DNA of 64,000 nt from Schmidtea nova (GCA_044892505.1 CM097884.1:49848001-49912000), one strand, 5' to 3'. Positions 22,961 to 59,199 are shown, counted from the first letter of the stretch. The notes: generated by a model from the sequence alone, not told the origin. Made by a program: numbers and translations.

Positions 22961-23536
22961 GTGGATCATTAATAAAAGTAATTATTTTTGTTTGTTGAAT
23001 TATTTTCTCGGGTAAAGCCTAATAATTCCCCATAATTAAATTGGCCTGATAATTAGAGGTATCTGCCGCAGGTTTCAGGAAGGCCGACTGGGACTCTGAG
23101 TTGCGCGGTTAAAAATAAATGGATTAATCATATAGTTAAAGGAAGTATGGGATACCCTGATAATTAGGAACATTTGGTCAGTCGACCTTAGGGGAGAGAT
23201 GGGGTTGTATATGGTACCTACGATAGTTTTCATTTAATTAACAATATAAAATAAATCTGAGATTCCATCATCAATTGAACCTAACAACGCAGATGATCAT
23301 CCACATGATAACGATGAGATTACCTACGATATTTTAAATCATCAAGTCAGTTCCGATTATTAATATGAACCAAATCGGAAACGTAAACAGACGGTCAAAG
23401 ACTGAAAGATTGACTGTGATAGTCAGGTTACATTTTCATCGACGGCTCTCAATAATCACCGAACAAACCTTGATCACATCTCTACAAATTTTCCAACTTA
23501 AGTTCAGAGTATAATCTAAGGGACAAAGGTCATACT

Positions 23537-23908
23537 GTGATGAACTTACGTCATAATTTATTCATTGAAGTTATTCAAAGTTACGTTTCCAGATTCATGA
23601 AAATGTATCACCAACTGAGCATGAATGGAAAAGATAATCATACCGATCACTCCATCGGAATCGCCAATACCGAGAGTCACAAGAAAAGGGTGTTAGGCAA
23701 TCTCAAAGCCTTACCCTGTGACGTTCTAGCAGCAGTTACTACAGCCATGATGAAATGGCGAAGTGAAAAGAAGAAGCGACCTCCTTTCTTGATATGGTCG
23801 AGCGGAATCGACGAGATATGGTGGAATGGTTGTCCCAGATGGCTAATAAGTTCGACGAGAAACTTACGAGCAGAACGCCAAGATGGTTCGTCCGAATCAC
23901 AGAACTAG
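23537..23908 (+). CDS. Unknown protein, ORF-A family copy (probably decayed)
   Basis: GC-richer island. KKRPPFLIWSSGIDEIWWNGCPRWLISS aligns with ORFs 57202-57570 and 54011-54616. Confidence 0.45.
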   Translation: MMNLRHNLFIEVIQSYVSRFMKMYHQLSMNGKDNHTDHSIGIANTESHKKRVLGNLKALPCDVLAAVTTAMMKWRSEKKKRPPFLIWSSGIDEIWWNGCPRWLISSTRNLRAERQDGSSESQN

Positions 23909-25345: not shown

Positions 25346-25376
<31 letters not shown>

Positions 25377-25379
<3 letters not shown>

Positions 25380-40134: not shown

Positions 40135-41359
40135 TGTTGGGCTAGCTAAACAGAGGAAAGAGTAAAATAAACCTATAATAATTGAAACAAAAAGAGAAAA
40201 TATAAGATAAGAAAGGGGAATATTAAATTTAAAAGAAAAAGGGTAATATAAATAAAATATAGATGAATTACTGGTAAATTAAATATAAAAATAGATAAAT
40301 TGAGGAGATTTCCAAAATTAACCGGCATAAGAGACACCTAAAAACAAATAAAATGTAAATATTGATAATTAAAACAAAATAAAAGTATTTTTTATTAAAT
40401 AATTGTTCTGAAAAGCCGGATCACCTAGAAAGAATCGAATCGAATCTAAAAAATAAAAATTAATTAAGTAAAGAAAATAATAATTGGACCTACGGTATAG
40501 ACAATCAAACCTGATTGGTCAAGCTAGACCAGACAGATCAGTATATATACTGATCATAAATTCAGTCAAAAAAAAGATAAGAATAACAAGTTTTAGACAA
40601 CAGACTAGTATTGACACAAACTGAGACATTTAGATCAATTGCGAATTTTACATTGAAACCTAGACATTGTCACATTTCAACGGAACTTGGACCCAATCAC
40701 CAGTTTTCGGATCAATAATCTTAAGTAATTTTAAGTTTGATTTATGTATATGCTTTATGTTGTTGGTTTCGGATTGGGTTAAAACAAAAATAGTAAATTA
40801 AACTAATAATTATTTTTAAACGCTCTAGGGATTCCTCCATCCAAAACCTCACATAAAATGCTTACATATCACACGAGCACCCTCGATCATTTCCCTGTAA
40901 TAATCGAGTTGGAAATGTGCAAGGTGTTTGAACAATGATGGGCAGGTGAGCTCTATTGCTAAAACTACTCCCCATTTATGTTCACGGGTTCGTCTCGCTG
41001 CCGATAGAAGGACTTACGCTTTAAGTTTAATCTATCCGCATCCATTATCTTTCATTTCAATTATTTCTTTAGCCCCCTTTTCTTTACAATATATTTCAAC
41101 TTTCAATTTTTCTTTCGGCCCCCTTCTTTACAATATCAACAAATAATCTTTAATCAATTACAATTTATTATCTCTTTAATGTTTCTATTGTTTATTAGAT
41201 TTATGTTAATCTTATTGTTAGTTCTAATGTATAGTTAATTTATTCTATATTTTCCTTTAAATCATTTTAAATTTTTAATAAATCACATTATTTTCTATAC
41301 TTTACCATAAAATAAATACAAACAAAAATTATTTAATAAGCAAAGAAATCACAAAATTT

Positions 41360-41950
41360 CTATTCAAAGTATTTGGTAATGTCTTCATCGGAAACTACAA
41401 AATCCGTGGTTAAATCAATTTCCGGAATGTTGTTTGATCGTTGTGCCAATTGCTGGAGAACTTGTTTCTTCCAGCGACGCTGACGTGCGCCCATCTTACT
41501 CTTCTTTTTCTTCTTGACCTCTGGATTTATCGGGTTCTTTGGTGTACTGGCTACTGTTGTTGCTTGAACCTGAGAGGGTTCCTCGGTGTTCGTTCCTTTT
41601 GTGCATCCTGCTTTCTCGTCAGCCCAATGTTGATAAGTGATTGGTCGAATGAGCTGGCTGAGCTCTTGAGTTAGATACGATGCCGTTACAGATTTTAGGC
41701 ATTTCTTTAATTCCATCTTCGTCGCGTCCAATTCCATTTGTAATTCGCTGTTAGCTCGCTGAGAGCGTTGAGTTTTTGTAATTTGCATTTTCATTTGTTC
41801 TGGACTGAACCAGCTTTTCTTTAGGTTGGAGATTATGCCATCGGCTTCTTTTATTTTTTCCGATTTTCGCAGCATTTCCTTTTCGAGGCTGCGAATTATC
41901 CTCCATGCTTTGTCTAACTCGGCTTGGTTAGTTGCTGTGTTGGCTGACAT
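41360..41950 (-). CDS. Unknown 196-aa coiled-coil protein with basic and acidic C-terminal motifs (ORF-B family, intact copy)
   Basis: Open GC-richer ORF. It aligns without gaps over 63 aa to 54911-55462, and with one gap to 57863-58231. ATG lies 3 nt after a TTTTAG acceptor. Confidence 0.75.
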   Translation of the reverse strand: MSANTATNQAELDKAWRIIRSLEKEMLRKSEKIKEADGIISNLKKSWFSPEQMKMQITKTQRSQRANSELQMELDATKMELKKCLKSVTASYLTQELSQLIRPITYQHWADEKAGCTKGTNTEEPSQVQATTVASTPKNPINPEVKKKKKSKMGARQRRWKKQVLQQLAQRSNNIPEIDLTTDFVVSDEDITKYFE

Positions 41951-42079
41951 TTTCTAAAATTCAGGATTGGTTTATTAACATGAAATTAGTAGTCTTGATT
42001 CGAACGATTCTCATACTTTTGACAGTTATTAATTGCAAATTCAGGAAGAGAAAATGATGTACCTATTACACTTTCAACA

Positions 42080-42216
42080 CTGTCGCTATGTACAGCGATC
42101 AGATACCTTTATTTCATAATACATTTTATTTATTCACGCCTGTGCTATATACAGCAATCAGGATAAGAAAATTATTAAAATAAACTAAGATCCACTGCCC
42201 TATGTACAGGGTTCAG
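42080..42216 (-). repeat. Three repeated stem-loops, each containing TGTAYATA on the minus strand
   Basis: Plus strand CTG-TCGCT-ATGTAC-AGCGA-TCAG, CCTG-TGCT-ATATAC-AGCA-ATCAGG and CTG-CCCT-ATGTAC-AGGG-TTCAG. Spacing 59 and 55 nt. Confidence 0.75.
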
Positions 42217-42677
42217 GATAAGCAATTATGTTTAATTATTTATCTGGAATGTTTGAACCTATAGCCTATTGCTGCTATGTTACTTGCGTAGTAGATCACT
42301 ACGTTATTAGAGTTATCGATTTTTATGTTGTTATTAAAATTATATTTTGTACAAATTCTTAACCGTGTATCTGCCGCTCTATGCCCACAAACCCCAGATG
42401 TGACAATCGAAAAATATAGCTTAACATTCTGTGAATCTCAAGGTAAAATCAGATTAATCAAATCACAGCTATATCTGTCTCAAACTACAATCAAACCTCA
42501 ACTTAACTATAAACTCAAAAATTTAAATCGATTATAAAATAAAACTTCAACTGGCTATACTATCCAGTGAAAACTAAGGTTAGAAATCAAAAATAAAATT
42601 CCTACCCTCGTCACGGCGCTTTACACCGGTCGGACGGCCTAACTGTACGGAGCAGTCGTTTCTACTCGGCACAGTAT

Positions 42678-42969
42678 GCCTCCATTTCACCGATTGCACG
42701 GTGATCGGAGCCCCTTAAATCGTACGTAATTTCTACTGTATCTACTGTATATAAATAATATATATATATTCGCCTCCTTCCACTGATTTCACAGTAGAAG
42801 AAGCTCGACCCAAAAATGGTTTATAAAAATATACTTCAACCTAATTGTTAATATCACAACATAATGTTGCCTCCTTCCACCGATTACACGATGGAAGAAG
42901 CTCAATAAAAGGTATATAATAGATATATGAAGTCGTCTCCTACCACTGATTGCACAGTGGAAGAAGCTT
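42678..42969 (-). repeat. Four ~35-bp palindromic repeats separated by unique AT-rich spacers
   Basis: Consensus CCTCCTTCCACYG-ATTNCA-CRGTGGAAGAAGCT. Loops start at 42693, 42786, 42883 and 42949. Stems show compensatory T-A to C-G changes. Confidence 0.8.
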
Positions 42970-45900
42970 AGTTCAATTCTATATTTAATAATAATTTAAA
43001 ACATACTCAAAATATTTTATTAAAATAACCAAAATGGTCAATGACAGAACTCATAGAAAAACAAATTTATAAAAACAAGAAAAACAAAATATTTATACCT
43101 TTTATGTTGTTCACAAAATTTGCATATACAAAACAAAATTTTCAATCACTGAAAAATTTTTCACCTATCACTTTATCTATATTTTTAACTGAATCTGGAT
43201 CAGTATTTATACTGACCAGATCAGATGTTGAACCAATCAGCGTGAAGCTGATTATCAGATCAGCACAAATAATAAATTACATTAAAAATCAAATCGATTG
43301 ATTTGCTTTAAATTGCTAATAATTTGTTGTTTTTGATTTTTAATATTCTGTAATTCTTTTTCTTTATTATTTCTTTATTTTGCCTTAAATACAATTAAAT
43401 ATCATTGTTTCTTTAACACTTTTACATTTTCTATTTACTTTCTTCTAAATTTTGATAGAAAATTGATATTCTTTATTACATTTTAATTCGTTTTTACTGA
43501 TATTTTCCATAATTATATTTATTTTAATTTATTCTTATTTTATTTCTTATTATTATTATTTTTTATGCTAAATGTGGATCAAATGGTGGATCCAACATTT
43601 ACATGATTTTGTCATAATAATTACCTTTGTCATATAAATTATATTTCGTATTAATAATTTTGTTCTCTTAATCTTTTTCATACAATTTTTATATGCTAAT
43701 TTTGTGGTGTTAATGAATTGAATTATAGAACTTAAATTATGAAATTTAGTGCGCCGACGGGGAGCAATAGGTTCCCAGGGTGTCACTCCGCATCGTGTGG
43801 TTTCAGAGGCTCCACACATGGTAGAGAAATCAATAAAATTAAATAAAATTCTACAGGGTTGCACATGGAACACAAAGAATCGAGGCAAAAATTTCCGTTG
43901 CGGATAGCAGTGAGTAGGTGAGGGCACTGATTTAAATAAATTATGGCAAACAAGAATAAACCCGAGAAGCGTTATATGTTAACAAATTTAAATCCGAGGC
44001 TGTTTTTATAGGTACATTAACCCTTCTGTATTATATATATAATTTACTTACAGGAAATTGGCGACCATAAATGAAAGATTTAACGGAACAAAGTATTAAT
44101 ATAATAGTAATTTTTAGCTAACAGGTACTCAAATTTTAATTATTTATATCTATTATCCAAAAATTTATTATAAAATTTAAATAATTTTATTTAGCAGTAT
44201 AAGGCCTGAAAACGTAAAAGAACCAAAGCGGAAGCAGAAGAGTAGGCCTATAGTGTGTCCTGGGACTAGGTCTGGTTCTAGGCGTAGACCAGGACCAGAA
44301 CCGGTTCTAATTCTAGACGAGATATCTCGACCAACGTAATTAATTAATTTATTCAATAAATTATTATGTTATTGTATTTTTTTAGTCCAAGTATAACGGA
44401 TGAATATGAAGATCCTCTCTCTTGACCAAACATTACTCCGGTCTCTCAGCGAAATTAAATAATTAATATATTCAATAAATTATTATTTTATTGTATCTTT
44501 TAAGAAGTATAAGAATTATTAACATGAGACGAAATGAACGATTATAATGCCACCATCTATATTGACCAACAGAGAAATCAAAAAGACAACGAGTGGCTTC
44601 AAAGTGAAAAATATTGCCTTAATTAATATAGTCTTTATATTTAGATTTAGTCGAAATTCTTCATGGAAAAAACAGATATAACGGTAAATAAATAACTTTC
44701 TTTAATAAATATATATAATTTACTTACAAAAAATTGGCGACCATAAATGAAAGATTTTACGGAATAGAGTAGTAATGGAATAGTAATTTTTAGCTAACTG
44801 GTACTCAAATTTTAATTATTTATATCTATTATTCAAAAATTTATTATAAAATTTAAATAATTTTATTTAGCAGTATAAGGCCTGAAAACGTAAAAGAACC
44901 AAAGCGGAAGCAGAAGAGTAGGCCAATAGTGTGTCCTGGGACTAGGCCTGGTTCTACGCATAGACCAGGACCAGAACCGGTTCTAATTCTAGACGAGGTA
45001 TCTCGACCAACGTAATTAATTTATTTATTCAATAAATTATTATGTTATTGTATTTTTTTAGTCCAAGTATAACGGATGAATATGAAGATCCGAACATTAC
45101 ACTGGTCTCTCAGCGAAAGTAAATAATTATTATCTTCAATAAATAATTATTTTTTTAATCTTTTTAGAAGCGAAAGAATTATTAACAAGAGGCAAAGTGA
45201 ACAGTTTATAATGCCGCCTTCTGAGACTCTGGCAGAGAAAAGACGAATGGCTTCAAAGTAAAAAATATTACATTTAATAATATTGTCTTTATATTTAGAT
45301 TTAGTTGAAATTCTTCATTGAAAATACAGATAGAACGGTAAATAAATAATTTTTTTTAATAAATATATATAAATTACTTACAGAAAATTGGCGAAACCAA
45401 ATGTAAGATTTAACGGAAAAGAGGGGAGATTTAATGGAATAGAGTAGTAATAGAATAGTAATTTTTAGCTAACTGGTACTCAAATTTTAATTATTTATAT
45501 CTATTATCCAAAAATTTATTATAAAATTTAAATAATTTTATTTAGCAGTATAAGGCCTGAAAACGTAAAAGAACCAAAGCGGAAGCAGAAGAGTAGGCCA
45601 ATAGTGTGTCCTGGGACTAGGCCTGGTTCTACGCATAGACCAGGACCAGAACCGGTTCTAATTCTAGACGAGGTATCTCGACCAACGTAATTAATTTATT
45701 TATTCAATAAATTATTATGTTATTGTATTTTTTTAGTCCAAGTATAACGGATGAATATGAAGATCCGAACATTACACTGGTCTCTCAGCGAAAGTAAATA
45801 ATTATTATCTTCAATAAATAATTATTTTTTTAATCTTTTTAGAAGCGAAAGAATTATTAACAAGAGGCAAAGTGAACAGTTTATAATGCCGCCTTCTGAG

Positions 45901-48900
45901 ACTCTGGCAGAGAAAAGACGAATGGCTTCAAAGTAAAAAATATTACATTTAATAATATTGTCTTTATATTTAGATTTAGTTGAAATTCTTCATTGAAAAT
46001 ACAGATAGAACGGTAAATAAATAATTTTTTTTAATAAATATATATAAATTACTTACAGAAAATTGGCGAAACCAAATGTAAGATTTAACGGAAAAGAGGG
46101 GAGATTTAATGGAATAGAGTAGTAATAGAATAGTAATTTTTAGCTAACTGGTACTCAAATTTTAATTATTTATATCTATTATCCAAAAATTTATTATAAA
46201 ATTTAAATAATTTTATTTAGCAGTATAAGGCCTGAAAACGTAAAAGAACCAAAGCGGAAGCAGAAGAGTAGGCCTATAGTGTGTCCTGGGACTAGGTCTG
46301 GTTCTAGGCGTAGACCAGGACCAGAACCGGTTCTAATTCTAGACGAGATATCTCGACCAACGTAATTAATTAATTTATTCAATAAATTATTATGTTATTG
46401 TATTTTTTTAGTCCAAGTATAACGGATGAATATGAAGATCCTCTCTCTTGACCAAACATTACTCCGGTCTCTCAGCGAAATTAAATAATTAATATATTCA
46501 ATAAATTATTATTTTATTGTATCTTTTAAGAAGTATAAGAATTATTAACATGAGACGAAATGAACGATTATAATGCCACCATCTATATTGACCAACAGAG
46601 AAATCAAAAAGACAACGAGTGGCTTCAAAGTGAAAAATATTGCCTTAATTAATATAGTCTTTATATTTAGATTTAGTCGAAATTCTTCATGGAAAAAACA
46701 GATATAACGGTAAATAAATAACTTTCTTTAATAAATATATATAATTTACTTACAAAAAATTGGCGACCATAAATGAAAGATTTTACGGAATAGAGTAGTA
46801 ATGGAATAGTAATTTTTAGCTAACTGGTACTCAAATTTTAATTATTTATATCTATTATTCAAAAATTTATTATAAAATTTAAATAATTTTATTTAGCAGT
46901 ATAAGGCCTGAAAACGTAAAAGAACCAAAGCGGAAGCAGAAGAGTAGGCCAATAGTGTGTCCTGGGACTAGGCCTGGTTCTACGCATAGACCAGGACCAG
47001 AACCGGTTCTAATTCTAGACGAGGTATCTCGACCAACGTAATTAATTTATTTATTCAATAAATTATTATGTTATTGTATTTTTTTAGTCCAAGTATAACG
47101 GATGAATATGAAGATCCGAACATTACACTGGTCTCTCAGCGAAAGTAAATAATTATTATCTTCAATAAATAATTATTTTTTTAATCTTTTTAGAAGCGAA
47201 AGAATTATTAACAAGAGGCAAAGTGAACAGTTTATAATGCCGCCTTCTGAGACTCTGGCAGAGAAAAGACGAATGGCTTCAAAGTAAAAAATATTACATT
47301 TAATAATATTGTCTTTATATTTAGATTTAGTTGAAATTCTTCATTGAAAATACAGATAGAACGGTAAATAAATAATTTTTTTTAATAAATATATATAAAT
47401 TACTTACAGAAAATTGGCGAAACCAAATGTAAGATTTAACGGAAAAGAGGGGAGATTTAATGGAATAGAGTAGTAATAGAATAGTAATTTTTAGCTAACT
47501 GGTACTCAAATTTTAATTATTTATATCTATTATCCAAAAATTTATTATAAAATTTAAATAATTTTATTTAGCAGTATAAGGCCTGAAAACGTAAAAGAAC
47601 CAAAGCGGAAGCAGAAGAGTAGGCCAATAGTGTGTCCTGGGACTAGGCCTGGTTCTACGCATAGACCAGGACCAGAACCGGTTCTAATTCTAGACGAGGT
47701 ATCTCGACCAACGTAATTAATTTATTTATTCAATAAATTATTATGTTATTGTATTTTTTTAGTCCAAGTATAACGGATGAATATGAAGATCCGAACATTA
47801 CACTGGTCTCTCAGCGAAAGTAAATAATTATTATCTTCAATAAATAATTATTTTTTTAATCTTTTTAGAAGCGAAAGAATTATTAACAAGAGGCAAAGTG
47901 AACAGTTTATAATGCCGCCTTCTGAGACTCTGGCAGAGAAAAGACGAATGGCTTCAAAGTAAAAAATATTACATTTAATAATATTGTCTTTATATTTAGA
48001 TTTAGTTGAAATTCTTCATTGAAAATACAGATAGAACGGTAAATAAATAATTTTTTTTAATAAATATATATAAATTACTTACAGAAAATTGGCGAAACCA
48101 AATGTAAGATTTAACGGAAAAGAGGGGAGATTTAATGGAATAGAGTAGTAATAGAATAGTAATTTTTAGCTAACTGGTACTCAAATTTTAATTATTTATA
48201 TCTATTATCCAAAAATTTATTATAAAATTTAAATAATTTTATTTAGCAGTATAAGGCCTGAAAACGTAAAAGAACCAAAGCGGAAGCAGAAGAGTAGGCC
48301 TATAGTGTGTCCTGGGACTAGGTCTGGTTCTAGGCGTAGACCAGGACCAGAACCGGTTCTAATTCTAGACGAGATATCTCGACCAACGTAATTAATTAAT
48401 TTATTCAATAAATTATTATGTTATTGTATTTTTTTAGTCCAAGTATAACGGATGAATATGAAGATCCTCTCTCTTGACCAAACATTACTCCGGTCTCTCA
48501 GCGAAATTAAATAATTAATATATTCAATAAATTATTATTTTATTGTATCTTTTAAGAAGTATAAGAATTATTAACATGAGACGAAATGAACGATTATAAT
48601 GCCACCATCTATATTGACCAACAGAGAAATCAAAAAGACAACGAGTGGCTTCAAAGTGAAAAATATTGCCTTAATTAATATAGTCTTTATATTTAGATTT
48701 AGTCGAAATTCTTCATGGAAAAAACAGATATAACGGTAAATAAATAACTTTCTTTAATAAATATATATAATTTACTTACAAAAAATTGGCGACCATAAAT
48801 GAAAGATTTTACGGAATAGAGTAGTAATGGAATAGTAATTTTTAGCTAACTGGTACTCAAATTTTAATTATTTATATCTATTATTCAAAAATTTATTATA

Positions 48901-50566
48901 AAATTTAAATAATTTTATTTAGCAGTATAAGGCCTGAAAACGTAAAAGAACCAAAGCGGAAGCAGAAGAGTAGGCCAATAGTGTGTCCTGGGACTAGGCC
49001 TGGTTCTACGCATAGACCAGGACCAGAACCGGTTCTAATTCTAGACGAGGTATCTCGACCAACGTAATTAATTTATTTATTCAATAAATTATTATGTTAT
49101 TGTATTTTTTTAGTCCAAGTATAACGGATGAATATGAAGATCCGAACATTACACTGGTCTCTCAGCGAAAGTAAATAATTATTATCTTCAATAAATAATT
49201 ATTTTTTTAATCTTTTTAGAAGCGAAAGAATTATTAACAAGAGGCAAAGTGAACAGTTTATAATGCCGCCTTCTGAGACTCTGGCAGAGAAAAGACGAAT
49301 GGCTTCAAAGTAAAAAATATTACATTTAATAATATTGTCTTTATATTTAGATTTATTTGAAATTCTTCATGGAAAAAACCGATAGAACGGTAAATAAATA
49401 ATTTTCCTTAATAAATATATATAATTTACTTACAAAAAATTGGCGACCATAAATGAAAGATTTAACGGAATAGAGTAGTAATAGAATAGTAATTTTTAGC
49501 TAACTGGTACTCAAATTTTAATTATTTATATCTATTATCCAAAAATTTATTATAAAATTTAAATAATTTTATTTAGCAGTATAAGGCCTGAAAACGTAAA
49601 AGAACCAAAGCGGAAGCAGAAGAGTAGGCCTATAGTGTGTCCTGGGACTAGGTCTGGTTCTAGGCGTAGACCAGGACCAGAACCGGTTCTAATTCTAGAC
49701 GAGATATCTCGACCAACGTAATTAATTAATTTATTCAATAAATTATTATGTTATTGTATTTTTTTAGTCCAAGTATAACGGATGAATATGAAGATCCTCT
49801 CTCTTGACCAAACATTACTCCGGTCTCTCAGCGAAATTAAATAATTAATATATTCAATAAATTATTATTTTATTGTATCTTTTAAGAAGTATAAGAATTA
49901 TTAACATGAGACGAAATGAACGATTATAATGCCACCATCTATAATGACCAACAGAGAAATCAAAAAGACAACGAGTGGCTTCAAAGTAAATAATATTGCC
50001 TTTAATAATATTGTCTTTATATTTAGATTTAGTCGAAATTCTTCATGGAAAAAACAAATAGAACGGTAAATAAATAATTTTCTTTAATAAATATATATAA
50101 TTTACTTACAAAAAATTGGCGACCATAAATGAAAGATTTAACGGAATAGAGTAGTAATGGAATAGTAATTTTTAGCTAACTGGTACTCAAATTTTAATTA
50201 TTTATATCTATTATCCAAAAATTTATTATAAAATTTAAATAATTTTATTTAGCAGTATAAGGCCTGAAAACGTAAAAGAACCAAAGCGGAAGCAGAAGAG
50301 TAGGCCTATAGTGTGTCCTGGGACTAGGCCTGGTTCTACGCATAGACCAGGACCAGAACCGGTTCTAATACTTGACGAGGTATCTCGAACAACATAATTT
50401 ATTTATTTATTCAATATATTATTATGTTATTGTATTTTTTAGTCCAAGTATAACGGATAGACGAAATGAACGATCTGGATGCCCCAATTTATGGGAAGAA
50501 CAAATGTAAGAATTTGTTAAAATTTATTATTGAATTTACTTTTTAATTTGAGTTTTTAATTTAAAT

Positions 50567-50655
50567 AATACTTTTAATATATTATTTTTAAATCATTTTG
50601 TAATTGTTTTTCAAACCATTACAAAATGATTTAAAAGTATAATATTAAAAGTATT
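50567..50655. repeat. Long AT-rich inverted repeat (arms about 37 bp)
   Basis: AATACTTTTAATAT...TTTTAAATCATTTTGTAAT / ATTACAAAATGATTTAAAA...ATATTAAAAGTATT. Confidence 0.8.
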
Positions 50656-50669
50656 TATATTATGAAATA

Positions 50670-51186
50670 TTCATTTTACTTTTTTTTTTGATAAAAAACA
50701 TTTATGTAATAGAATTATATATATGAAACAATTTACTTTATTCATTTTTTGATAAAAAACATTTATGAAATAGAATTATATATGAAACAATTTAATTTAT
50801 TCATTTTTTGATAAGAAACATTTATGAAATAGAATTATATATGAAACAATTTAATTTATTCATTTTTTGATAAGAAACATTTATGAAATAGAATTATATA
50901 TATGAAACAATTTACTTTATTCATTTTTTGATAATAAACATTTATGAAATAGAATTATTTTTGATAAAAAACATTTATGAAATAGAATTATATATGAAAC
51001 AATTTACTTTATTCATTTTTTGATAATAAACATTTATGAAATAGAATTATATATATGAAACAATTTACTTTATTCATTTTTTGATAAAAAACATTTATGA
51101 AATAGAATTATATATGAAACAATTTACTTTATTCATTTTTTGATAATAAACATTTATGAAATAGAATTATTTTTGATAAAAAACAT
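50670..51186. repeat. Minisatellite of 59-61 bp units (two 33-bp short units)
   Basis: TTTTTTGATAA(A/T)AAACATTTATGAAATAGAATTATATATGAAACAATTTACTTTATTCA, about 10 copies. Confidence 0.92.
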
Positions 51187-51329
51187 TAAAGAAATATTTT
51201 TTATGTAACAACATATTATTATTATTATTGATATAATTTATTTTTATTTTATTTATAATGTTATATATTGAAAATTTATTTAAATATTTATTTAAATTCA
51301 GGTTTAATCTACAAAAATTTTTGCAACAG

Positions 51330-51765
51330 TAGGTTCCATAATGATTGCCATGTCATTATGGAAAAATACTACTCGTTGACATATATTACTGTTACCCACC
51401 TCCTATGTCCCACCTGTAAACTTATCGAAATTTCCAGATATCTTGATTTCTTTAATAGGCACTGTAGCCATCTTTCGCAGTTTCAGCCTTCCAAGAAAAT
51501 TTTATGTAAGGAAATTTTTCCTAATTTTATTAATAACAACAACCAAATTATTCCTATAAATAACAATAATCTAAATAATAATCTAAATAATACAAATAAT
51601 CTAAATAATACAAATAATAATCATACAAATAATTTAAATAATATCAATAATACAAATAATACAAATAATACAAATAATTTAAATAATAATAAAAGAAAAC
51701 ATATTAAAATACCGGATTCAGTTCCTACTAAAATTCAAATAATAGATCTCACTGATGATGAATAA
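51330..51765 (+). CDS. Putative exon encoding a His/Cys motif, an Asn-rich tract and an IIDLTDDE tail
   Basis: Part of ORF 51268-51765. The acceptor TTTTTGCAACAG|T at 51329 is in phase 2 with the upstream 63-nt exon 50443-50505. Reads RFHNDC...LLCPTCK...HCSH, then N-rich repeats. Confidence 0.4.
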
Positions 51766-52959
51766 TTAGTCATCAGTGATGATGAAAATTTAAATAATAA
51801 TAATTTAAATAATATTAACCAAATAGGATATGGTGCCGTCGAGATCGTAAATGATCTAAATAATAATCATATAATTATTAAAATGGACGTTGAAAATTAA
51901 AATTTGAAATATATATAATAAATATATATAATTTACTTACAAAAAATTGGCGACCATAAATAAAAGATTTAACGGAATAGAGAAGTAATAGAATAGTAAT
52001 TTTTAGCTAACTGGTACTCAAATTTTAATTATTTATATCTATTATCCAAAAATTTATTATAAAATTTAAATAATTTTATTTAGCAGTATAAGGCCTGAAA
52101 ACGTAAAAGAACCAAAGCGGAAGCAAAGAGTAGGCCTATAGTGTGTCCTGGGACTAGGCCTGGTTCTAGGTATAGACCAGGACCAGAACCGGTTCTAATT
52201 CTAGACGAGGTATCTCGAACAACATAATTAATTTATTTATTCAATATATTATTATGTTATTGTAATTTTTAGTCCAAGTATAGCGGATGAATATGAAGAT
52301 CCTCTCTCTTGACCAAACATTACTCCGGTCTCTCAGCGAAATTAAATAATTAATATATTCAATAAATTATTATTTTATTGTATCTTTTAAGAAGTATAAG
52401 AATTATTAACATGAGACGAAATGAACGATTATAATGCCACCATCTATAATGACCAACAGAGAAATCAAAAAGACAACGAGTGGCTTCAAAGTAAAAAATA
52501 TTGCCTTTAATAATATTGTCTTTATATTTAGATTTAGTCGAAATTCTTCATGGAAAAAACAGATAGAACGGTAAATAAATAATTTTCCTTAATAAATATA
52601 TATAATTTACTTACAGAAAATTGGCGACCATAAATGAAAGATTTAACGCAATAGAGGGGAGATTTAACGGAAAAGAGTAGTAATATAATAATAATTTTTA
52701 GCTAACTGGTACTCAAATTTTAATTATTTATATCTATTATCGAAAATTTTATTATTAAATTTAAATATTTTTATTTAGTAATATAAGCCCTGATGACACG
52801 GACCTAATGAAACCTAATTATCCGGAGCCTGAACCGAAGTGTAAACGTTAGATTTATTCAATAAATTCTTTCAGAAATGTATCCAGTATTTATTTAAAAA
52901 GTATTCCAAATCACCATAATTTATTCAAAGATTTTATAAAAATTTAAACAAATGTTGCG

Positions 52960-53700
52960 ACAACCTTCAAATTTTTAATCAAACCATTTTATAGAAAATT
53001 AAAGTTTAAATTTACAATACTACAATAAAAATTCAATTAAGTTACTTTATATATGTTTGCAATGTAAAATTTAATTATTAATTGTATATGCAGCGGCGGA
53101 ACTACTGGACGCAGGACCCTGCGTTGCGGGGGGGCCTACCAGCTATAGGGGGTCCTCATATAAAAAAATTATACTCTCAATAATATTTATACTATAAAAC
53201 TCTTTTCCGCAGGTATAGTGGGCCCTAAAATATAAAACTTGGATAAAAAAAATGTCATCCATCGTATTAAAATATATTGTTCAAAAATTTATTTTTGTAT
53301 TGGAGTGCGTAGTTTACATTTAAACGAAAAGTTTTACCCTTTTTATTATTAACCTTTTTATTATCTATTTAATATGTGAAGCTTTATTTTTTTAAAAAAA
53401 AACATTCTTTTGCGGGGGGGCCCAAATTTTGAAGTTCCGCCACTGTGTATATGCAACTTAAAATTAATAACTTCTAATTTTGAATCAAACCATTTTATAG
53501 AAAATTAAAATTTATTTATACTCTATTACAATGAAAACTCAAAAATTACTTCATTTAGAAGAAAAACACAAAAATTAATAACAAAACACTTGTGCATCAC
53601 AAAATTCGACAAACCAATTTTCCAACCAAGCCATTTTGTAGAAAATTAATTTTTACACAAAATTTATTAGAATAAAAACTCAAAAAATGAACCCATTTTT
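52960..53700. repeat. ~143-bp tandem repeat, left part (resumes at 58600-58870)
   Basis: AATCAA(A/G)CCATTTTRTAGAAAATT recurs near 52977, 53484, 53626, 58669 and 58812. The period is 142-144 once the MITE is removed. Confidence 0.75.
53091..53445. mobile_element. hAT-type MITE (355 bp) with 8-bp TSD
   Basis: Termini CAGCGGCGGAACT / AGTTCCGCCACTG. TSD TGTATATG at 53083-53090 and 53446-53453. TTGCGGGGGGGCC subterminal motif at both ends. Confidence 0.95.
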
Positions 53701-54010
53701 TGGGAATCATCCCAAGGATGATGATCATTGTTAGTTATTGATTGATGAGGATCGGATGGGGGATCCCTGAGAGAAATAAAAGGTATAACGACAATCTAGT
53801 GATTAATGATGCACTGATCGTGATGAAATAAATTGATTAAAATTGAGTTAAAAACAAATCAACTCAGAATGAGCTGCAACTAGACCGTCCTACATAATAT
53901 ACTCAACAACCATAATACGACCAACTCATCAGACAGGTGAGGCCTACTTGAAAACAATCACTACTCGAGTAGGTTGACCAATGTATATATATATATATAC
54001 CTGATCAAAA

Positions 54011-54616
54011 TTGATGTCATGTGATTTCAATCAACCATTTTCCGTTCAGAGAGAAACGATGAAACAGGAAAAACTTTTGGATTCGCCATTAGTCTCGCCA
54101 CCCGCGACAAAGGAGGGTCATAAATCTCGAAGGAAGCGGCAGGCCCGATCTAGCCATCCGGTGATCAATTGTAATTATATGACCGAGATCCAAGGGGAGA
54201 AGGACGCTCCTCGACCAATCGCCGAGCTAGCGCGCAGACATTTGCGTCGATGGACACGACGGCACATGAACGTGGCCGCTAATGTTCCAGCCTGCACATT
54301 CCGAGTGCAATTGCGATGGGAGGGAGATGTAAATTGGCCGTCATCCTCTAGCCATACGGAGCAGAGACCCTCACGGTGGTTCTATCAATTCCTCGATGAA
54401 TCCGATCAACCACGATGGTTGTTAAGTTCAGGAGCTATGACCGGTCAATCGCTATATCAACTGGGATATCTGCTTCTGGACAGGCCTCGGTGTAGCGACA
54501 CTGGGGAAGTCCAATCCTACTCAAACACTCCCGGAAGCGTCACGTTGGATCCCCATCCGGAACCGAATGATCTCCGCTTGTGGGAGGTGTTCATACACCA
54601 AGGCAAGCTGAGCTAG
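54011..54616 (+). CDS. Unknown protein, ORF-A family (unit X2)
   Basis: 201-codon ORF downstream of CCAAT and a TATA-like run (53978-54000). RPSRWFYQFLDESDQPRWLLSS resembles the RPPF...DE...PRWLISS motif of 23537. The true start is uncertain. Confidence 0.5.
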   Translation: MMSCDFNQPFSVQRETMKQEKLLDSPLVSPPATKEGHKSRRKRQARSSHPVINCNYMTEIQGEKDAPRPIAELARRHLRRWTRRHMNVAANVPACTFRVQLRWEGDVNWPSSSSHTEQRPSRWFYQFLDESDQPRWLLSSGAMTGQSLYQLGYLLLDRPRCSDTGEVQSYSNTPGSVTLDPHPEPNDLRLWEVFIHQGKLS

Positions 54617-54910
54617 CACCCATCCCCGGAGCTATATCACGCAGACGGGACCCGACGAGACGATAATCCAGCTGACCAAGATTTACGATCTTTCTGTTAG
54701 AAGAGAGAATGTCGCACACAGAAAAATCAGGAGATTAAGTTAATCCTATGTCATAATTAAAATAAATGTCTGTTTGAAAAAGATTTCTTGTTTTGTTTTC
54801 TGAATGCATGTAACGAGTGGATGATTAAGGAGTAGTTGATTGATCATGAAGACACGAATAGAGAGACGAATAGATTTCCACTACATCAATTAACATCAAA
54901 TATTACAGAC

Positions 54911-55462
54911 ATGAACGTGGACAACACTCGAAACTATAAACAGGAGGCTCGGGAGCACAAGGCTCGCTCCAAGGTCCTAGAGAGCCGCTTACATCAGTTA
55001 AGTGAGGAGCACCAACGCGTGAAGACGACATGGTTCAACTCCGAGAGGGTCAAGGCCATCCTACAGGCGAGATATCGCGCGGAACAGGCAGCCGAAGAGC
55101 AAGCCAGAGAAGTCGCAGCATTAAAATTGGAACTGACCAATTATCTAAAAACCTCGACGCAGGAATTCATAACCGAGCAGTTACGCCCAATGATCAGGGC
55201 AAGTACGTTCAATAAGTGGATAAAGACAATAGCAGTCACCACCAGTACTCAAACCGAAACGGAGACAACCGCAACAGCGACTACTGAGTCGATAATGATA
55301 ACTCCGGAAGGCTCTAAGAGGATTTAACGTCGAAATCGCCTCGGAGCAAAGAAACGTCGAGAGCGTCGAGCCTATGCCGAACGTCTGGGCATTGAGGTCG
55401 ATCTACTCAGTGGACTCTCCGAACAAGAACTATTAAACGTGATCCGGCCATCTGTTCTGTTA
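54911..55462 (+). pseudogene. ORF-B family coiled-coil protein (unit X2) with one internal TAA at 55325-55327
   Basis: ATG lies 2 nt after TACAG. The frame beyond the stop (RRNRLGAKKRRERR...IEVDL) matches the C-terminus of 41360-41950 (KSKMGARQRRWKK...PEIDL). Confidence 0.75.
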
Positions 55463-55786
55463 ATTTATAAAAAAATGTATTCTCATTGAATGACTTGACT
55501 TGTTTGCTTGCGGTATGTTTGAGAATTAAATGTAAAGTAAAACCGATTCATTTGAGGCTACAGACACTCTAAAAGTTAAGTTTACCCTAGGACAATAAGA
55601 GAGCGTATAATTGGGACCGAAAGAAATCCACAAACACTTTCTATCGGTAGTGGTGGACCCGTGAATAAACAAGGGAATAGTAGCCGCAAGGTTGCTCACC
55701 TGTCTTGTCATTTCACAACGTTGACACAGCACCAACATGATGAGTAGTTAGGGATACATCATGGGTGTCAGCGGGGGAATGTTTTT

Positions 55787-56400
55787 ATGTTGGCGAGATC
55801 ACCCTAACGTTTAACATCTTAATGATCTCAGTTGTCCAGCAAACCAACACACCAGCAACATTAACAAAATAGCACACAGAATAAACAAGACATTAATAAA
55901 TAACGAGAACATTTAGAAATAATAAGTTGAAAAAAAATATTTAGGAAATAATTATTATAGATGAGTATAATTAAAACAAAAATAAAATGAGAAATCAATA
56001 AAGAAATGATAAAAGTATAAAATTAATCAGAAATTAGAAAAATAACAAGAATTAGGAAATTAAATGAAATTATAAAAGGAAATAATATAATAACAAATAA
56101 AACAAATAATACGATAAAATAAAATAAAATAAAATAATTGCATGAATTGGCCAATAAAAGGCTAACTTGATTCTGATTGGCTGTCTGAGCGCCGAATTTA
56201 CTATGTAAGGAAGCGCTCAGGTTAGCTCCGCAAGGTCATTTTTTACTAGTCAGTTGTACCACTTTAAAGGTCAACTTTACTTTAGCTTAATATCACACTG
56301 CGTAGTAATTATTAGTCGAAGGAATAAGACGTTTACCACAACACTCGGGACACGTATCTGGAAAACACTGAATTCTATTTGGAAAATCGTTGTAAGTAAT
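55787..56400 (+). promoter_or_regulatory. LTR-like promoter module between units X2 and X3
   Basis: Preceded by purine tract AGCGGGGGAA (about 55770-55779). TGTTGG start, A-rich tract, CTGATTGG at 56173, GTAAGT donor at about 56392. Confidence 0.5.
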
Positions 56401-57201
56401 TGAATTTTATTTATCAATACATTTTTATGATTACATGCTTTCGTTCTAAATCTCAGTACTGGATAGATAATGCGAGAGTCGGGACAATCACGCAGATTGT
56501 CGGCTCTCCGGGGAGATCTCTCTGTGTTCCGTGTCTCGGCACGGGGCGGAGATAGGTATCTCCGTAAAGGCCTTTTTATTAGTGAATGAGTGACGAGGGG
56601 CGAATGTCGGGGAAACGGGTAGCAGATTCCAGAATTCCGTGCGTTATACATTATCCTAAAAGAGAACCGTATGAATGCCAATTATTGACGGCACAGAATA
56701 TAAATACTATTGCGTCACCCACGATGTTGAGGTAGTAGGACATTAAAAACAAATCCAACCCTTCCGTTAAACAATTTTCAACTGATATCCTAAATATTAG
56801 CTTAAAAAATTCCACCAAAATCAGGTTATTAAAACTGCCATTTTTGAGTTTTCCGATCAGAGAAATTTTTATTCAACCAACCTAAACCATTAGAACTTAA
56901 TTCGACTTAAAATTCCTCCCCAACACTCCGTACAATTATCGTATGAGTAGAAGCACAAGAATCGCTGTCATTTCAATATCGGATCGGGTCGGGTCGGGTA
57001 AAACTTTCAATAGGTTGTGCAGGTTATTAATGTGCACCATCTAAATACTATATTCAAATCCAATACTATACTATATCCAAATGATATATTCAGGTTCTAG
57101 AAATATTTTACACGGGTCAACAGTTTCGAGGTCCGAAAGGAGAGTCTCCCAAGGTTAACGCATGTCCAACCAATCCGGGGTATCATAACAACCATCTAGT
57201 C

Positions 57202-57570
57202 ATGACAATGCCACTCAAGGAGATCCCAACCGAGTTGGCGCAGGAGATATTCACCGAACATCGTCAAGAGTTTGAAAGAACCGGAGCTGTCCCATCTTTT
57301 AGTCTATTCCGGGACAGCCCCGACGAAATAATATGGCATGGCAGTAAGAAGTGGCCGATCGATGAAGATCGACCTTACTCGCCCAGTTTGGCGAAATATT
57401 TTGTCGAAACCCCCACTGAAATACTTGGCCGGTTTCAGATTTACTTCAGCGGACGCTTCGTATTTGCTCCCGCTCCATCTCCCAATCCAACCGACTCTCC
57501 TATCAGTTCCTCAGCGTTGAGTGAGGATATCGAGGATTCCAGTGAAGTTAAATTAGATAACAATTATTGA
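57202..57570 (+). CDS. Unknown 122-aa protein, ORF-A family (unit X3)
   Basis: PSFSLFRDSPDEIIWHGSKKWPI aligns without gaps to PPFLIWSSGIDEIWWNGCPRWLI at 23537. Acidic, Pro/Ser-rich tail. Confidence 0.6.
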   Translation: MTMPLKEIPTELAQEIFTEHRQEFERTGAVPSFSLFRDSPDEIIWHGSKKWPIDEDRPYSPSLAKYFVETPTEILGRFQIYFSGRFVFAPAPSPNPTDSPISSSALSEDIEDSSEVKLDNNY

Positions 57571-57862
57571 TCCTGAATGTGCGTATCATCGATGTTTAGT
57601 AGTATAATATATCTTTAGTTTCGTTAACTATTCTTGTTCTGTGTTGTCTAAATTTGGTTTTATAAAGTAATAAATAGAGTAAATTGTAGTGTAGAAATTT
57701 GCAGAGTAGACCCGGACGAGGTATAGATGTCTGAAGTAAGTAAAGAGAAGTGAGCATAGAGTCGTTAAGGGCAAATAAGATGAAGTGTTGCATTCACTGG
57801 GAGTCATTGTTGTCAACCCGTAAATCGTGAGAGAAATTTAGAAGATTATCACATAGGAAGCA

Positions 57863-58231
57863 ATGTCAACCGAGGAAAAGGCACTATGGCGGTTGAAACG
57901 GAGACTCATCAGCATCGAGAGCAGTTATTTCACTCATGGCGGAATGAAGGCGGTCAAAGACAATTTACTAAGAGCAACCTAGGTCATCCAGGACCAACAG
58001 AGAGAATTGGAAGCGGTACAAATTGTACTGAAAAATTGTCGAAAAATTGTCATAACAGAGAAGTTCATTGCGGATAATTTGAAGGAATTAATTCTTCCTG
58101 TGACCCTGGAGAAATGGTTTCCCGCGCGAAATAAATCGGGAAGTACAGTCCTCAAGGCGACTAAAACAACCTCGCCGACCAAAAGGAAAAGACACACTCA
58201 CAGCGACGCAACCAGACTAAGCTTAGGTTGA
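57863..58231 (+). pseudogene. ORF-B family coiled-coil protein (unit X3) with one internal TAG at 57980-57982
   Basis: MSTEEKALWRLKRRLISIESSYFTHGGMKAVKDNLLRAT*VIQDQQRELEAVQIVLKNC...LKELILPVTLEKW. ATG lies 6 nt after CATAG. Confidence 0.7.
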
Positions 58232-59199
58232 CAAACGAACTAAATAAAGCTGCAGCCGAGATCGATTCAACCACAAATGCAACCAATGGGATCGATAATT
58301 CACTGTGGAATGTAAATTAATGTTATGAGAGTGAATGCGTGTATAATTGAGGATCCTTGTTGTTCTTCTTTGATAAAGTTCTATCATAGATTGATAGTAG
58401 TAGTGATTTCAGGGAAAATTGAATTTTATTGAGTAGGCTAATAAAGTGTTGTAATGCCGAGTACCTAAGACAATTTTTTTTTGAATATGGATTTAAGGGA
58501 CAAGAAAAGAGACTGAAAAAGACCACCCGGAAAGAGTGACCAGAGAAGGGTGAGGGGAAAGAGAATAAGACCTTCTATCGGCCAGTTAGAACCCGAACTA
58601 AAATTAATAACAAAAAATTAATAACAAAACACGTGTGTAACACGAAAAACGACAACTTTTAAATTTAGAATCAAGCGATTTTATAGAAATTTAAATTTTA
58701 TCTATACTTTATTACAATGAAAACTCAAAAAATTATTTTAAATAGCTAAAACTTACAAAATTAATAACAAAACACATGTACATCACAAAATACGACAATT
58801 TTCAGATTTTTAATCAAGCCATCTTGTAAACAATAAAATTCTGTCTATCTTTTGTTTCACTAAAAACTCAATCGGGCCGGTTAATCGACTCGAAAAAGGC
58901 ATTTAAGGTTTTGTAGTAGGAGGCTATCTTCTGTCTGCGCCAATATCCGCAAATGGGCATAATATATAATCGCTCGGGTTTACGTAGTACACGTTATTAC
59001 ATAATCATTGTAATTAAGTATATTTAATGAAACTCAATAATTATGTAATTACACATATAATTACGTAATTTTATATATTTGTTTAAGTTAAGTGAATTTT
59101 TGTTTTAATTAACTGGAATACTTGTTTTAATTAGATGACTTTTTTGTTTTAATTTAATAAAAATATGAAAATTTCATTTTAAATTTAATAAAAAATATG

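What the first reader, a model, noticed from the sequence alone, without database searches (positions are those of the whole stretch)
40135..58600. Overall model: a repeated, enzyme-less, retrovirus-like expression unit (X family)
Seen: four GC-richer islands (about 23.1-24.2, 40.1-43.6 minus, 53.7-55.9 and 55.8-58.6 kb) reuse the same parts in the same order. These are an A-rich TGTTG(G) module with CCAAT, TATA and a GTAAGT donor, a structured leader, ORF-A, an AG acceptor directly before ORF-B, and a conserved 3' segment. None carries RT, integrase, transposase or Rep motifs, and the proteins are highly diverged from each other, so the family is old and diverse. Inference: a non-autonomous LTR-like or endogenous-virus-like element that makes ORF-A from unspliced RNA and ORF-B from spliced RNA. 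Alternatives are accessory regions of Bel/Pao or Gypsy elements, or coiled-coil ORFs of Penelope/Terminon-type arrays. I recognise no described family.
Basis: partly seen in the sequence, partly recalled or inferred. Interest (0 to 1): 0.9.

Follow-up and report, generated by a model that had tools for sequence, protein, structure and literature searches.

The report
Orphan two-gene repeat family, enzyme-less

Summary

**Shared parts that pass a test**
- ORF-B is a helical protein with a basic tail. It is present in three islands, intact only at 41360-41950(-).
- ORF-A is a small basic protein. Its W.G...W motif occurs only three times in all six frames, each time inside an island ORF (islands 1, 3, 4).
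- A 3' segment of about 250 nt is shared by islands 2 and 3, with a roughly 35-nt stub in island 4. It folds on the sense strand only, with 11 of 32 pairs changed on both sides.
- A CCAAT/TATA core is shared by island 2 and a fifth, inverted fragment at 40135-40757.

**Parts that did not hold up**
- The GTAAGT donor is not a shared part.
- Leaders do not align between copies.
- No paired LTRs were found.
- No RT, integrase or transposase remnant was found.
- No Rfam family matched.
- No protein relative turned up among 1.8 billion representatives.

**Context**
- Copies sit inside two different satellites.
- Third-codon GC is 0.44-0.52. That is close to the window's hAT and one gypsy copy, and unlike its one host gene (0.27-0.31).

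**Best reading (about 0.45):** relics of a non-autonomous, probably RNA-mediated element, copied in trans through its 3' RNA. Splicing, termini and the partner element remain unshown.

The parts
40758..43597 (-). Unit I2, the best-preserved copy. It starts with TGTTGG, ends with CCAACAACA, and has TAAA on both sides.
   Evidence: Read directly. The boundaries and the 4-bp repeat were chosen by eye and are not statistically supported.
43173..43597 (-). I2 5' module: TGTTGG, an A-rich stretch of about 300 nt, then a CCAAT box and TATA core (43173-43240).
   Evidence: The core aligns to 40511-40580 with z 9.7. The CTGATTGGYY box occurs 5 times against 0.35 expected.
42672..42972 (-). I2 leader: four tandem hairpins with 13-bp stems and 6-nt loops.
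   Evidence: fold_alignment found 4 pairs changed on both sides. U-G pairs make the fold sense-strand specific. The motif is found only here.
41360..41950 (-). ORF-B of I2, intact, 196 aa. It has two long helices, a conserved middle block, and a basic helix with a short acidic tail.
   Evidence: By my estimate the chance of so long an open frame here is about 2e-4.
40754..41012 (-). 3' segment of I2, a structured RNA element.
   Evidence: nhmmer E 8e-7 against 55636-55864.
40135..40757 (+). Fragment X2b: an inverted 5' module (TGTTGG at the satellite junction, A-rich stretch, CCAAT/TATA core at 40511-40580) pointing towards the 3' end of I2.
   Evidence: (I1, D14).
43598..44032 (.). Unassigned 435 nt between I2 and the 675-bp satellite. 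It could be the rest of X2b, which would mean I2 is nested in it, or an upstream part of I2.
   Evidence: No significant similarity to any X part on either strand. The satellite resumes at 44033.
53690..55864 (+). Unit I3. The left boundary is uncertain by about 25 nt (53690-53713).
54014..54616 (+). ORF-A of I3, 200 aa, GC 0.52, carrying the W.G...W motif.
54836..55450 (+). ORF-B of I3, broken by one in-frame stop. There is no frameshift relative to the intact I2 copy.
   Evidence: counts and outer bounds only.
55636..55864 (+). 3' segment of I3. It runs without a recognisable break into the TGTTGG and A-rich module of I4.
55788..58602 (+). Unit I4: TGTTGG at 55788, an A-rich stretch at 55860-56150, CCAAT boxes at 56150-56182, GTAAGT at 56392, then leader, ORF-A, ORF-B and a 3' stub.
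57202..57570 (+). ORF-A of I4, 122 aa, open from its ATG, carrying the W.G...W motif.
57863..58410 (+). ORF-B of I4, broken by one in-frame stop and at least one frameshift.
   Evidence: counts and outer bounds only.
58566..58602 (+). Stub of the 3' segment of I4, cut off where the 143-bp satellite resumes. A purine-rich tract lies just upstream.
   Evidence: z 2.9; E 2.9.
23474..23908 (+). Island I1: only the ORF-A core is recognisable.
   Evidence: No ORF-B, 3' segment or promoter similarity was found.
5252..5388 (-). Possible sixth trace: a weak match to the start of the 3' segment, at the end of a gypsy remnant and on its opposite strand.
   Evidence: Covariance model, 15 bits, E about 0.05. 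A 14-nt pattern is shared (built after the fact). Pairwise alignments are not significant.

Best explanation
The islands are decayed copies of one old family of non-autonomous mobile elements, most likely RNA-mediated.

A full unit appears to be laid out in this order:
- an upstream A-rich stretch;
- a CCAAT/TATA promoter of RNA polymerase II type;
- a long, copy-specific structured leader;
- ORF-A, a small basic protein;
- ORF-B, a helical, probably coiled-coil protein with a basic tail;
- a conserved structured RNA segment of about 250 nt at the 3' end.

The unit encodes no polymerase, integrase or transposase. Copying would therefore depend on enzymes supplied in trans.

The 3' RNA segment is the best-conserved nucleotide stretch and folds only on the sense strand. 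That makes it the likely cis-acting handle by which the transcript is recognised. The two proteins would coat or escort that RNA.

**Shown**
- Homology of the two ORFs across copies.
- Homology and covarying structure of the 3' segment.
- Absence of enzyme domains.
- Position of the copies inside two different satellites.
- Decay of most copies.
- Element-like rather than host-like codon composition.

**Inferred**
- Transcription from the CCAAT/TATA module.
- An RNA intermediate.
- Trans-mobilisation.
- The roles of the proteins.
For: **ORFs**
- ORF-B is shared by three copies, and ORF-A and ORF-B keep the same order in I3 and I4.
- The ORF-A motif is unique to the island ORFs.
- The ORFs are conserved at protein level while their DNA is no longer alignable. 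nhmmer finds only the 3' segment. This implies past selection on the proteins.

**3' segment**
- Core identity is 78%, and all 32 pairs form in both copies.
- 11 pairs are changed on both sides, against 1 or fewer when the partners are slid.
- alifold gives -26.0 on the sense strand against -16.2 on the antisense strand, with a column-shuffle z of -5.9.
- One hairpin keeps its four-base loop while 4 stem pairs compensate.

**No enzymes**
- Pfam found none on the ORFs.
- The window's own pol, gag and hAT ORFs give no hit in the islands.

**Decay**
- Only one of three ORF-B copies is intact.
- I2 lacks ORF-A, and I1 keeps only ORF-A.

**Context and composition**
- Copies interrupt two unrelated satellites.
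- One fragment begins with TGTTGG exactly at a satellite junction.
- GC3 is 0.44-0.52. The hAT is 0.43 and gypsy copy 1 is 0.50, while the host gene is 0.27-0.31.
- The sense strand is A-rich, as in the gypsy copy at 33.5-38.2 kb.
Against: - No element termini, target-site duplications or terminal repeats could be shown statistically. The TG...CA ends and TAAA repeat of I2 were picked by eye.
- X2b and I4 are cut at the 3' side. This is not the usual pattern for target-primed reverse transcription.
- No partner element with the same 3' segment was found in the window. The only trace is one weak match on the wrong strand of a gypsy remnant.
- All evidence comes from five or six copies in one 64-kb window.
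- No relative was found anywhere else, so copy number and mobility are unknown.
- There is only one host gene for the composition contrast.
- A second gypsy copy is as AT-rich as the host, so composition is not a clean marker.
Confidence: 0.45

Rival explanations
1. A lineage-specific, fast-evolving host gene family. It would have either two cistrons or two exons, sit in satellite-rich heterochromatin, and spread by segmental and tandem duplication rather than transposition. The 3' segment would be a regulatory UTR or a linked non-coding RNA.
For: - I3 and I4 lie in tandem.
- Each unit has an ordinary CCAAT/TATA promoter with an NF-Y-type box.
- An AG lies 2-6 nt before the ORF-B ATGs and before the I4 ORF-A ATG. 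This is what cis- or trans-splice acceptors of small host genes look like.
- No transposition hallmarks could be proved.
- There are no homologues to contradict an orphan host family.
Against: - Most copies are broken or partial.
- GC3 differs strongly from the one host gene and matches two of the window's transposons.
- Copies lie in two different satellites, on both strands, and one is a bare 5' fragment.
- One copy has an inverted partner module.
Confidence: 0.2
2. The islands are pieces of a larger autonomous element whose enzyme genes lie outside the copies seen here. They could be long LTRs or solo LTRs that carry ORFs, accessory regions of a Gypsy or Bel/Pao element, or units of a Penelope/Terminon-like array with tandem or inverted pseudo-LTRs.
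For: - I2 has TG...CA-type ends with a 4-bp repeat.
- At the I3-I4 junction the 3' segment runs straight into an A-rich stretch and a promoter. This is the order of a U3-type region that follows a purine-rich tract.
- Both direct (I3-I4) and inverted (I2/X2b) neighbour arrangements occur.
- There is a weak match of the 3'-segment start at the end of a gypsy remnant.
- Three gypsy copies lie in the same window.
Against: - None of the three gypsy copies carries ORF-A, ORF-B or the 3' segment in its own orientation.
- No paired repeats flank any unit.
- No hammerhead or other ribozyme was found.
- No primer-binding site was seen after the promoter modules (read).
Confidence: 0.15
3. One reading: a retrovirus-like expression unit in which a leader donor is spliced to an acceptor before ORF-B. 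ORF-A would then be made from unspliced RNA and ORF-B from spliced RNA.
For: - I4 has GTAAGT in its leader, and a second one between the ORFs.
- An AG lies shortly before each ORF-B ATG.
- ORF-A precedes ORF-B in two copies.
Against: - I2, I3 and X2b have no GTAAGT in the leader.
- I2 has no ORF-A at all.
- The implied introns of 0.8-1.5 kb are far longer than the three host introns seen, which are 46-215 nt.
- There are no LTRs, and no gag, pol or env signatures.
Confidence: 0.1
4. Endogenised fragments of an unknown virus, with two structural or accessory genes plus a cis-acting RNA element, repeatedly captured in heterochromatin.
For: - The proteins are orphans.
- The composition is unlike the one host gene in the window.
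- There is a conserved structured RNA.
Against: - There is no viral hallmark gene.
- No match was found in 1.84 billion protein representatives, which include viral and metagenomic proteins, nor in solved structures.
- The several deeply diverged copies in one place fit intragenomic spread better than repeated capture.
Confidence: 0.05

Closest known systems
Non-autonomous LTR retrotransposons that keep some coding capacity (LARD-type, gag-only derivatives). Named from my own knowledge.
   Same: - No pol genes.
- An own promoter region upstream and a purine-rich tract before a conserved 3' region.
- TG...CA-like ends and a 4-bp flanking repeat in one copy.
- Gypsy elements that could supply enzymes live in the same window.
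   Different: - No paired LTRs.
- No primer-binding site.
- No Retrotrans_gag or zinc-knuckle signature.
- The 5' and 3' regions of one unit are not similar.
HeT-A of Drosophila telomeres: an enzyme-less non-LTR element with a gag-like ORF, an A-rich non-coding region, and a promoter at the 3' end that drives the downstream neighbour. From my own knowledge.
   Same: - No enzyme genes.
- An A-rich sense strand.
- A head-to-tail pair in which the 3' region of one unit is followed by an A-rich stretch and the promoter of the next unit.
- Dependence on enzymes supplied in trans.
   Different: - No poly(A) or oligo(A) junctions.
- The copies sit in internal satellites, not shown to be telomeric.
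- No sequence similarity could be tested, because no named hit came back from any search.
- There are two ORFs instead of one.
Penelope-like elements and the Terminons of bdelloid rotifers (PMC5408684, PMC8557442).
   Same: - Neighbouring copies occur in tandem or inverted order.
- They have coiled-coil ORFs of unknown function, which PMC5408684 lists among Terminon ORFs.
- An intron-like signal lies in one leader.
   Different: - No Penelope-type RT or GIY-YIG domain.
- No hammerhead ribozyme.
- The inverted pair here is tail-to-tail.
- The host is unidentified.
SINE/LINE pairs in which a dependent element shares the structured 3' end of its partner. From my own knowledge.
   Same: The most conserved part is a structured 3' RNA, as expected for a handle that a foreign reverse transcriptase recognises.
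   Different: - The units are 2-3 kb, have a polymerase II-type promoter and encode proteins.
- No LINE or other partner with this 3' end was seen in the window.
- Two copies are truncated at the 3' side.

Membership tests
LTR retrotransposon (non-autonomous) | Two long terminal direct repeats flanking the internal region | tested here: not met
   There are no direct repeats longer than about 37 nt within 40100-44050 or 53650-58650. The 5' flanks are not similar to the 3' segments (z below 1.1).
LTR retrotransposon (non-autonomous) | TG...CA termini with a 4-6 bp target-site duplication | tested here: inconclusive
   I2 starts with TGTTGG, ends with CCAACAACA and has TAAA on both sides. X2b starts with TGTTGG at a satellite junction. 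The boundaries were chosen by eye, there is no clean empty site, and I3/I4 show no duplication.
LTR retrotransposon (non-autonomous) | tRNA primer-binding site after the 5' repeat and a polypurine tract before the 3' repeat | tested here: inconclusive
   No TGG-type site follows the promoter modules, unlike the gypsy copy at 33545-38167, which has one. A purine-rich tract precedes the 3' stub of I4 but is weak in I2 and I3.
Endogenous retrovirus / retrovirus-like element | gag, pol (PR, RT, RNase H, IN) and usually env | tested here: not met
   Pfam found nothing on any island ORF. The window's own gag, pol and hAT ORFs give no hit in the islands. Blastp of all open segments finds only ORF-A and ORF-B shared.
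Penelope-like element / Terminon | Penelope-type RT, with or without GIY-YIG | tested here: not met
   (within the islands only).
Penelope-like element / Terminon | Hammerhead ribozyme in the terminal repeat | tested here: not met
   The Rfam gathering scan of the window gave 0 matches. The E-value scan of 40000-58700 found no ribozyme.
Penelope-like element / Terminon | Partial tandem or inverted neighbouring copies | tested here: inconclusive
   I3 and I4 lie in tandem. I2 and X2b are inverted but convergent.
Non-LTR retrotransposon (HeT-A-like, ORF1-only) | Fixed 3' end with an A-rich or simple-repeat tail, variable 5' truncation, variable target duplications | tested here: not met
   X2b and I4 are truncated at the 3' side. 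No poly(A) tail lies at the unit ends.
Dependent element sharing a partner's 3' RNA (SINE-like logic) | Conserved structured 3' end that is also present in an autonomous partner | tested here: inconclusive
   Conserved structure is shown. No partner was found in the window. The only other match is weak and lies on the opposite strand of a gypsy remnant.
DNA transposon (hAT, Tc1 and others) or Helitron | Transposase or Rep gene, or matching terminal inverted repeats with a family-typical target duplication | tested here: not met
   No transposase was found. The inverted modules of I2/X2b share only a 70-nt promoter core and 6-nt tips, and no matching flanking repeat was seen.
Ordinary conserved host gene | Homologues in other organisms; intact single or few copies | tested here: not met
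   No homologues were found. The exact sequences are absent from the collection. Most copies are broken.

The most novel reading that the evidence does not exclude
The unit is a so far undescribed kind of selfish element. It would be a self-promoted, enzyme-less pair of genes whose transcript is copied by the machinery of an unrelated element through a dedicated, covarying 3' RNA handle. That would make it a protein-coding hitch-hiker, rather than a deletion derivative of any known retroelement class.
Probability: 0.15. Interest if true: 0.7.

Novelty: new variant of a known kind. Interest (0 to 1): 0.4.

Why it matters
If the units are dependent mobile elements that still pay for two proteins and a conserved RNA fold, they would be a useful case for study. 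They could show how non-autonomous elements recruit foreign replication machinery, and what proteins such elements need beyond the enzymes.

The 3' segment is a ready-made probe. One covariance model could find all copies, and any enzyme-bearing partner, in the full genome.

If the units instead turn out to be a decaying host gene family or pieces of a larger known element, the finding is ordinary.

At present it is a well-documented orphan repeat family. It is not a demonstrated retrovirus-like system.

Tried and rejected
**Protein searches, all blank**
- Pfam scan.
- Word-indexed search with ORF-B.
- Word-indexed search with the ORF-A alignment.
- Profile search of ORF-B against 1.84 billion representatives. 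It gave one marginal coiled-coil hit at E 8e-4.
- Exact look-up of eight window ORFs.
- PDB sequence searches.

**Structure prediction**
- The AlphaFold model of ORF-B is helical only (pLDDT 66, pTM 0.24) and has no PDB fold match.
- The ORF-A model is too poor to use.

**RNA families:** Rfam found no family and no ribozyme. No tRNA genes were found.

**Metagenome pattern scans**
- The strict three-block pattern found nothing.
- The two-block pattern found 90 matches (81 listed), many in gut-metagenome contigs.
  - None showed extended similarity, so I read them as chance matches and dropped them.
  - I took none of them for human DNA.

**Similarities I saw by eye that failed shuffle tests**
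- 43602-44032 against any leader or 3' segment.
- The left end of I3 against the 3' segment.
- The I1 flanks against anything.
- The I3 and I4 promoters against the I2 promoter.
- A-rich stretches at 480-720 and 13200-13660 against the X 5' modules.

The idea that I2 is nested in X2b with a TAAA duplication therefore stays a hypothesis.

**Other ideas**
- Hammerhead, polymerase III B-box and chromodomain likenesses came to mind. The window's own letters do not support them, and I dropped them.
- The host could not be identified. Its AdoHcyase exon is 89% identical to an unnamed metagenome contig.

Full report
**Setting**

The window is AT-rich (about 30% GC), repeat-dense animal DNA.
- It holds one clear host gene, S-adenosylhomocysteine hydrolase, at 10509-12100(-), with short AT-rich introns.
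  - Its best relative is an unnamed metagenome contig at 89% identity with the same exon limits.
  - Its best named partial relative is from a flatworm, at 78%.
- It holds three Ty3/gypsy copies or remnants.
- It holds a hAT transposon with an intact transposase.
- It holds two satellites, a 675-bp unit at 44033-52800 and a unit of about 143 bp on both sides of 53.7-58.6 kb.

The host species could not be named. I searched the AdoHcyase exons one by one and did not join them.

**The observation: what holds**

The islands are GC-richer than their surroundings. Two protein families are shared.
- **ORF-B.**
  - It is intact only in island 2, at 41360-41950(-), 196 aa.
  - Island 3 (outer bounds 54836-55450) has one in-frame stop.
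  - Island 4 (57863-58410) has one stop and at least one frameshift (counts only).
  - The similarity covers the helical middle part and a basic C-terminal module.
- **ORF-A.**
  - It is weakly similar between islands 1 and 4 (E 1e-3).
  - The pattern W.G...W occurs exactly three times in all six reading frames of the 64 kb. Each occurrence is inside the ORF-A candidates of islands 1, 3 and 4.
- An all-against-all comparison of every open segment of the islands finds nothing else in common.
- ORF-A precedes ORF-B in islands 3 and 4. Island 2 has no ORF-A, and island 1 has no ORF-B.

**Non-coding parts**

Two do.
- **The 3' segment of islands 2 and 3.**
  - 41012-40754(-) matches 55636-55864(+) with nhmmer E 8e-7.
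  - Island 4 keeps only its first roughly 35 nt before the satellite resumes (z 2.9).
- **The CCAAT/TATA core of island 2.**
  - It aligns to a fragment on the opposite strand at 40511-40580 (z 9.7).
  - That fragment, here called X2b (40135-40757), starts with TGTTGG exactly where satellite homology stops. It has its own A-rich stretch.
  - It is a fifth, partial copy that points towards the 3' end of island 2.

An NF-Y-type CCAAT box (CTGATTGGYY) occurs five times in the window against 0.35 expected. Three of the five are in these modules.

The remaining claimed parts fare less well.
- GTAAGT is in the leader of island 4 only.
- Leaders are not alignable between copies.
- The leader of island 2 does contain four tandem hairpins with compensatory changes.

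**The 3' segment is a conserved RNA structure**

- In the 146-column core, all 32 predicted pairs form in both copies.
- 11 pairs differ on both sides, against at most 1 when the partners are slid by 1-3 columns.
- One hairpin keeps a four-base loop while four stem pairs change in a compensating way.
- The consensus fold is much better on the ORF-sense strand (-26.0 against -16.2 kcal/mol; column-shuffle z -5.9). Each single sequence is more stable than its shuffles only on that strand (z -2.2 and -2.3 against about 0).
- Two caveats apply. There are only two full copies, and the structure was derived from them.
- No Rfam family matches.
- A covariance model of the core finds only one further weak match, at 5252-5388(-) (E about 0.05). 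It lies at the end of a gypsy remnant but on the opposite strand. I do not rely on it.

**Boundaries and context**

- The block 40135-44032 has 675-bp-satellite sequence on both sides, though the left side is only a short, rearranged piece.
- The block of about 53.69-58.60 kb interrupts the 143-bp satellite.
- Neither junction gives a clean target duplication.
- Island 2 can be delimited as 40758-43597, with TGTTGG and CCAACAACA ends and TAAA on both sides. That would suit an integrase-type insertion nested in X2b.
  - However, the 435 nt at 43598-44032 resemble nothing, so this remains a hypothesis.
- At the I3-I4 junction, the 3' segment runs without a break into TGTTGG, an A-rich stretch and the next promoter. 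The two units form a head-to-tail pair whose internal boundary cannot be placed.
- No paired terminal repeats exist.

**Relatives elsewhere**

None were found. This covers the word-indexed protein searches, the profile search of 1.84 billion representatives, the exact look-up, the PDB sequence and fold searches, and two pattern scans of metagenome contigs.

ORF-B is predicted as two long helices, short helices, a disordered linker and a basic helix. The ORF-A model is unreliable.

**Interpretation**

The ORFs are conserved as proteins although their DNA no longer aligns, and a non-coding RNA fold is kept. Both point to past selection on a transcript and its products.

Several features favour a mobile, dependent element over a host gene family:
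- most copies are broken or partial;
- copies lie on both strands in two satellites;
- third-codon GC is 0.44-0.52, against 0.27-0.31 in the host gene and 0.43-0.50 in the hAT and one gypsy copy;
- the sense strand is A-rich;
- no enzyme is encoded.

I therefore favour, at about 0.45, relics of a non-autonomous, probably RNA-mediated element whose 3' RNA is the handle for enzymes supplied in trans.

The retrovirus-style splicing scheme is not supported by shared donors, and sequence alone cannot test it. An AG lies 2-6 nt before the ORF-B ATGs. It fits cis-splicing, trans-splicing of a bicistronic RNA, or an ORF-A/ORF-B fusion equally well. I did not build the joined model.

**Comparison with known kinds**

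The unit works most like one of three things:
- a coding non-autonomous retroelement;
- HeT-A, which is enzyme-less, A-rich, and has a promoter ahead of the next unit;
- a dependent element that shares a partner's 3' end.

It fails the tested membership features of LTR elements, retroviruses, Penelope-like elements, non-LTR elements and DNA transposons (see the table). What I say about HeT-A, LARD-type elements and SINE/LINE pairs is from my own knowledge. The coiled-coil ORFs of Terminons are from PMC5408684.

**Slips and omissions, stated as required**

It found nothing, and nothing rests on it.
- In my working reasoning I also recalled a few short generic consensus motifs (ribozyme core, B box, chromodomain signature) as leads. 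None was used as evidence.
- While reading the ORFs, I noted in my working reasoning where interrupting stops lie. The notes and this report give counts and outer bounds only.
Alignment tools printed consensus lines on their own, and I used none of them.
- I did not scan the viral contig collection (see referred steps).

Noticed in passing
44033-52800: A 675-bp satellite with about 11 units at 95-100% identity and a higher-order period of 2026 bp. It is interrupted at 50.5-51.9 kb by 59-61-bp tandem repeats and a 9-bp repeat run.
   Followed up: partly
52920-53690 and 58600-58871: A second satellite with a unit of about 143 bp and 62-77% identity between units. It flanks the I3/I4 block.
   Followed up: partly
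25317-28937: A hAT transposon with an intact 613-aa transposase ORF at 26458-28299 (BED finger plus hAT dimerisation domain) and flanking inverted repeats.
   Followed up: partly
33545-38167: A compact AT-rich Ty3/gypsy copy with LTRs of only about 110 nt (97% identical) and a tRNA-type primer-binding site. Its gag and pol are split over several ORFs.
   Followed up: partly
about 1385-5280 and 15916-16812: Two further Ty3/gypsy remnants. The first is GC-richer, on the + strand, and has a 173-bp internal tandem duplication at 2752-3097. The second is on the - strand.
   Followed up: no
10509-12100 (-): The host S-adenosylhomocysteine hydrolase gene, with introns of 46-215 nt. Its nearest relative (89%) is an unnamed metagenome contig with the same exon limits, so the host is probably a small environmental invertebrate.
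   Followed up: partly
29015-29165 and 39594-39772: Inverted repeats (80-83% complementary) that enclose 10.5 kb, including the gypsy copy. They may be the ends of a large foldback or DNA element.
   Followed up: no
about 480-720 (+) and 13200-13660 (+): A-rich stretches followed by AAACCCGAG-type motifs. The pattern RAACCCGWRM occurs 7 times against 1.07 expected, including at the I2 and I4 3' segments and near the right end of 43598-44032. No significant alignment to the X modules was found.
   Followed up: partly
42090-42230 (-): A second set of three short palindromic hairpins in the island 2 leader, between the four-hairpin array and ORF-B (read, D4).
   Followed up: no
31879-32247 (-): A weak Ulp1-type peptidase C48 match (E 0.0012). 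It may be a remnant of another transposon type.
   Followed up: no
1-300: A tandem repeat of about 45 bp at the start of the window.
   Followed up: no
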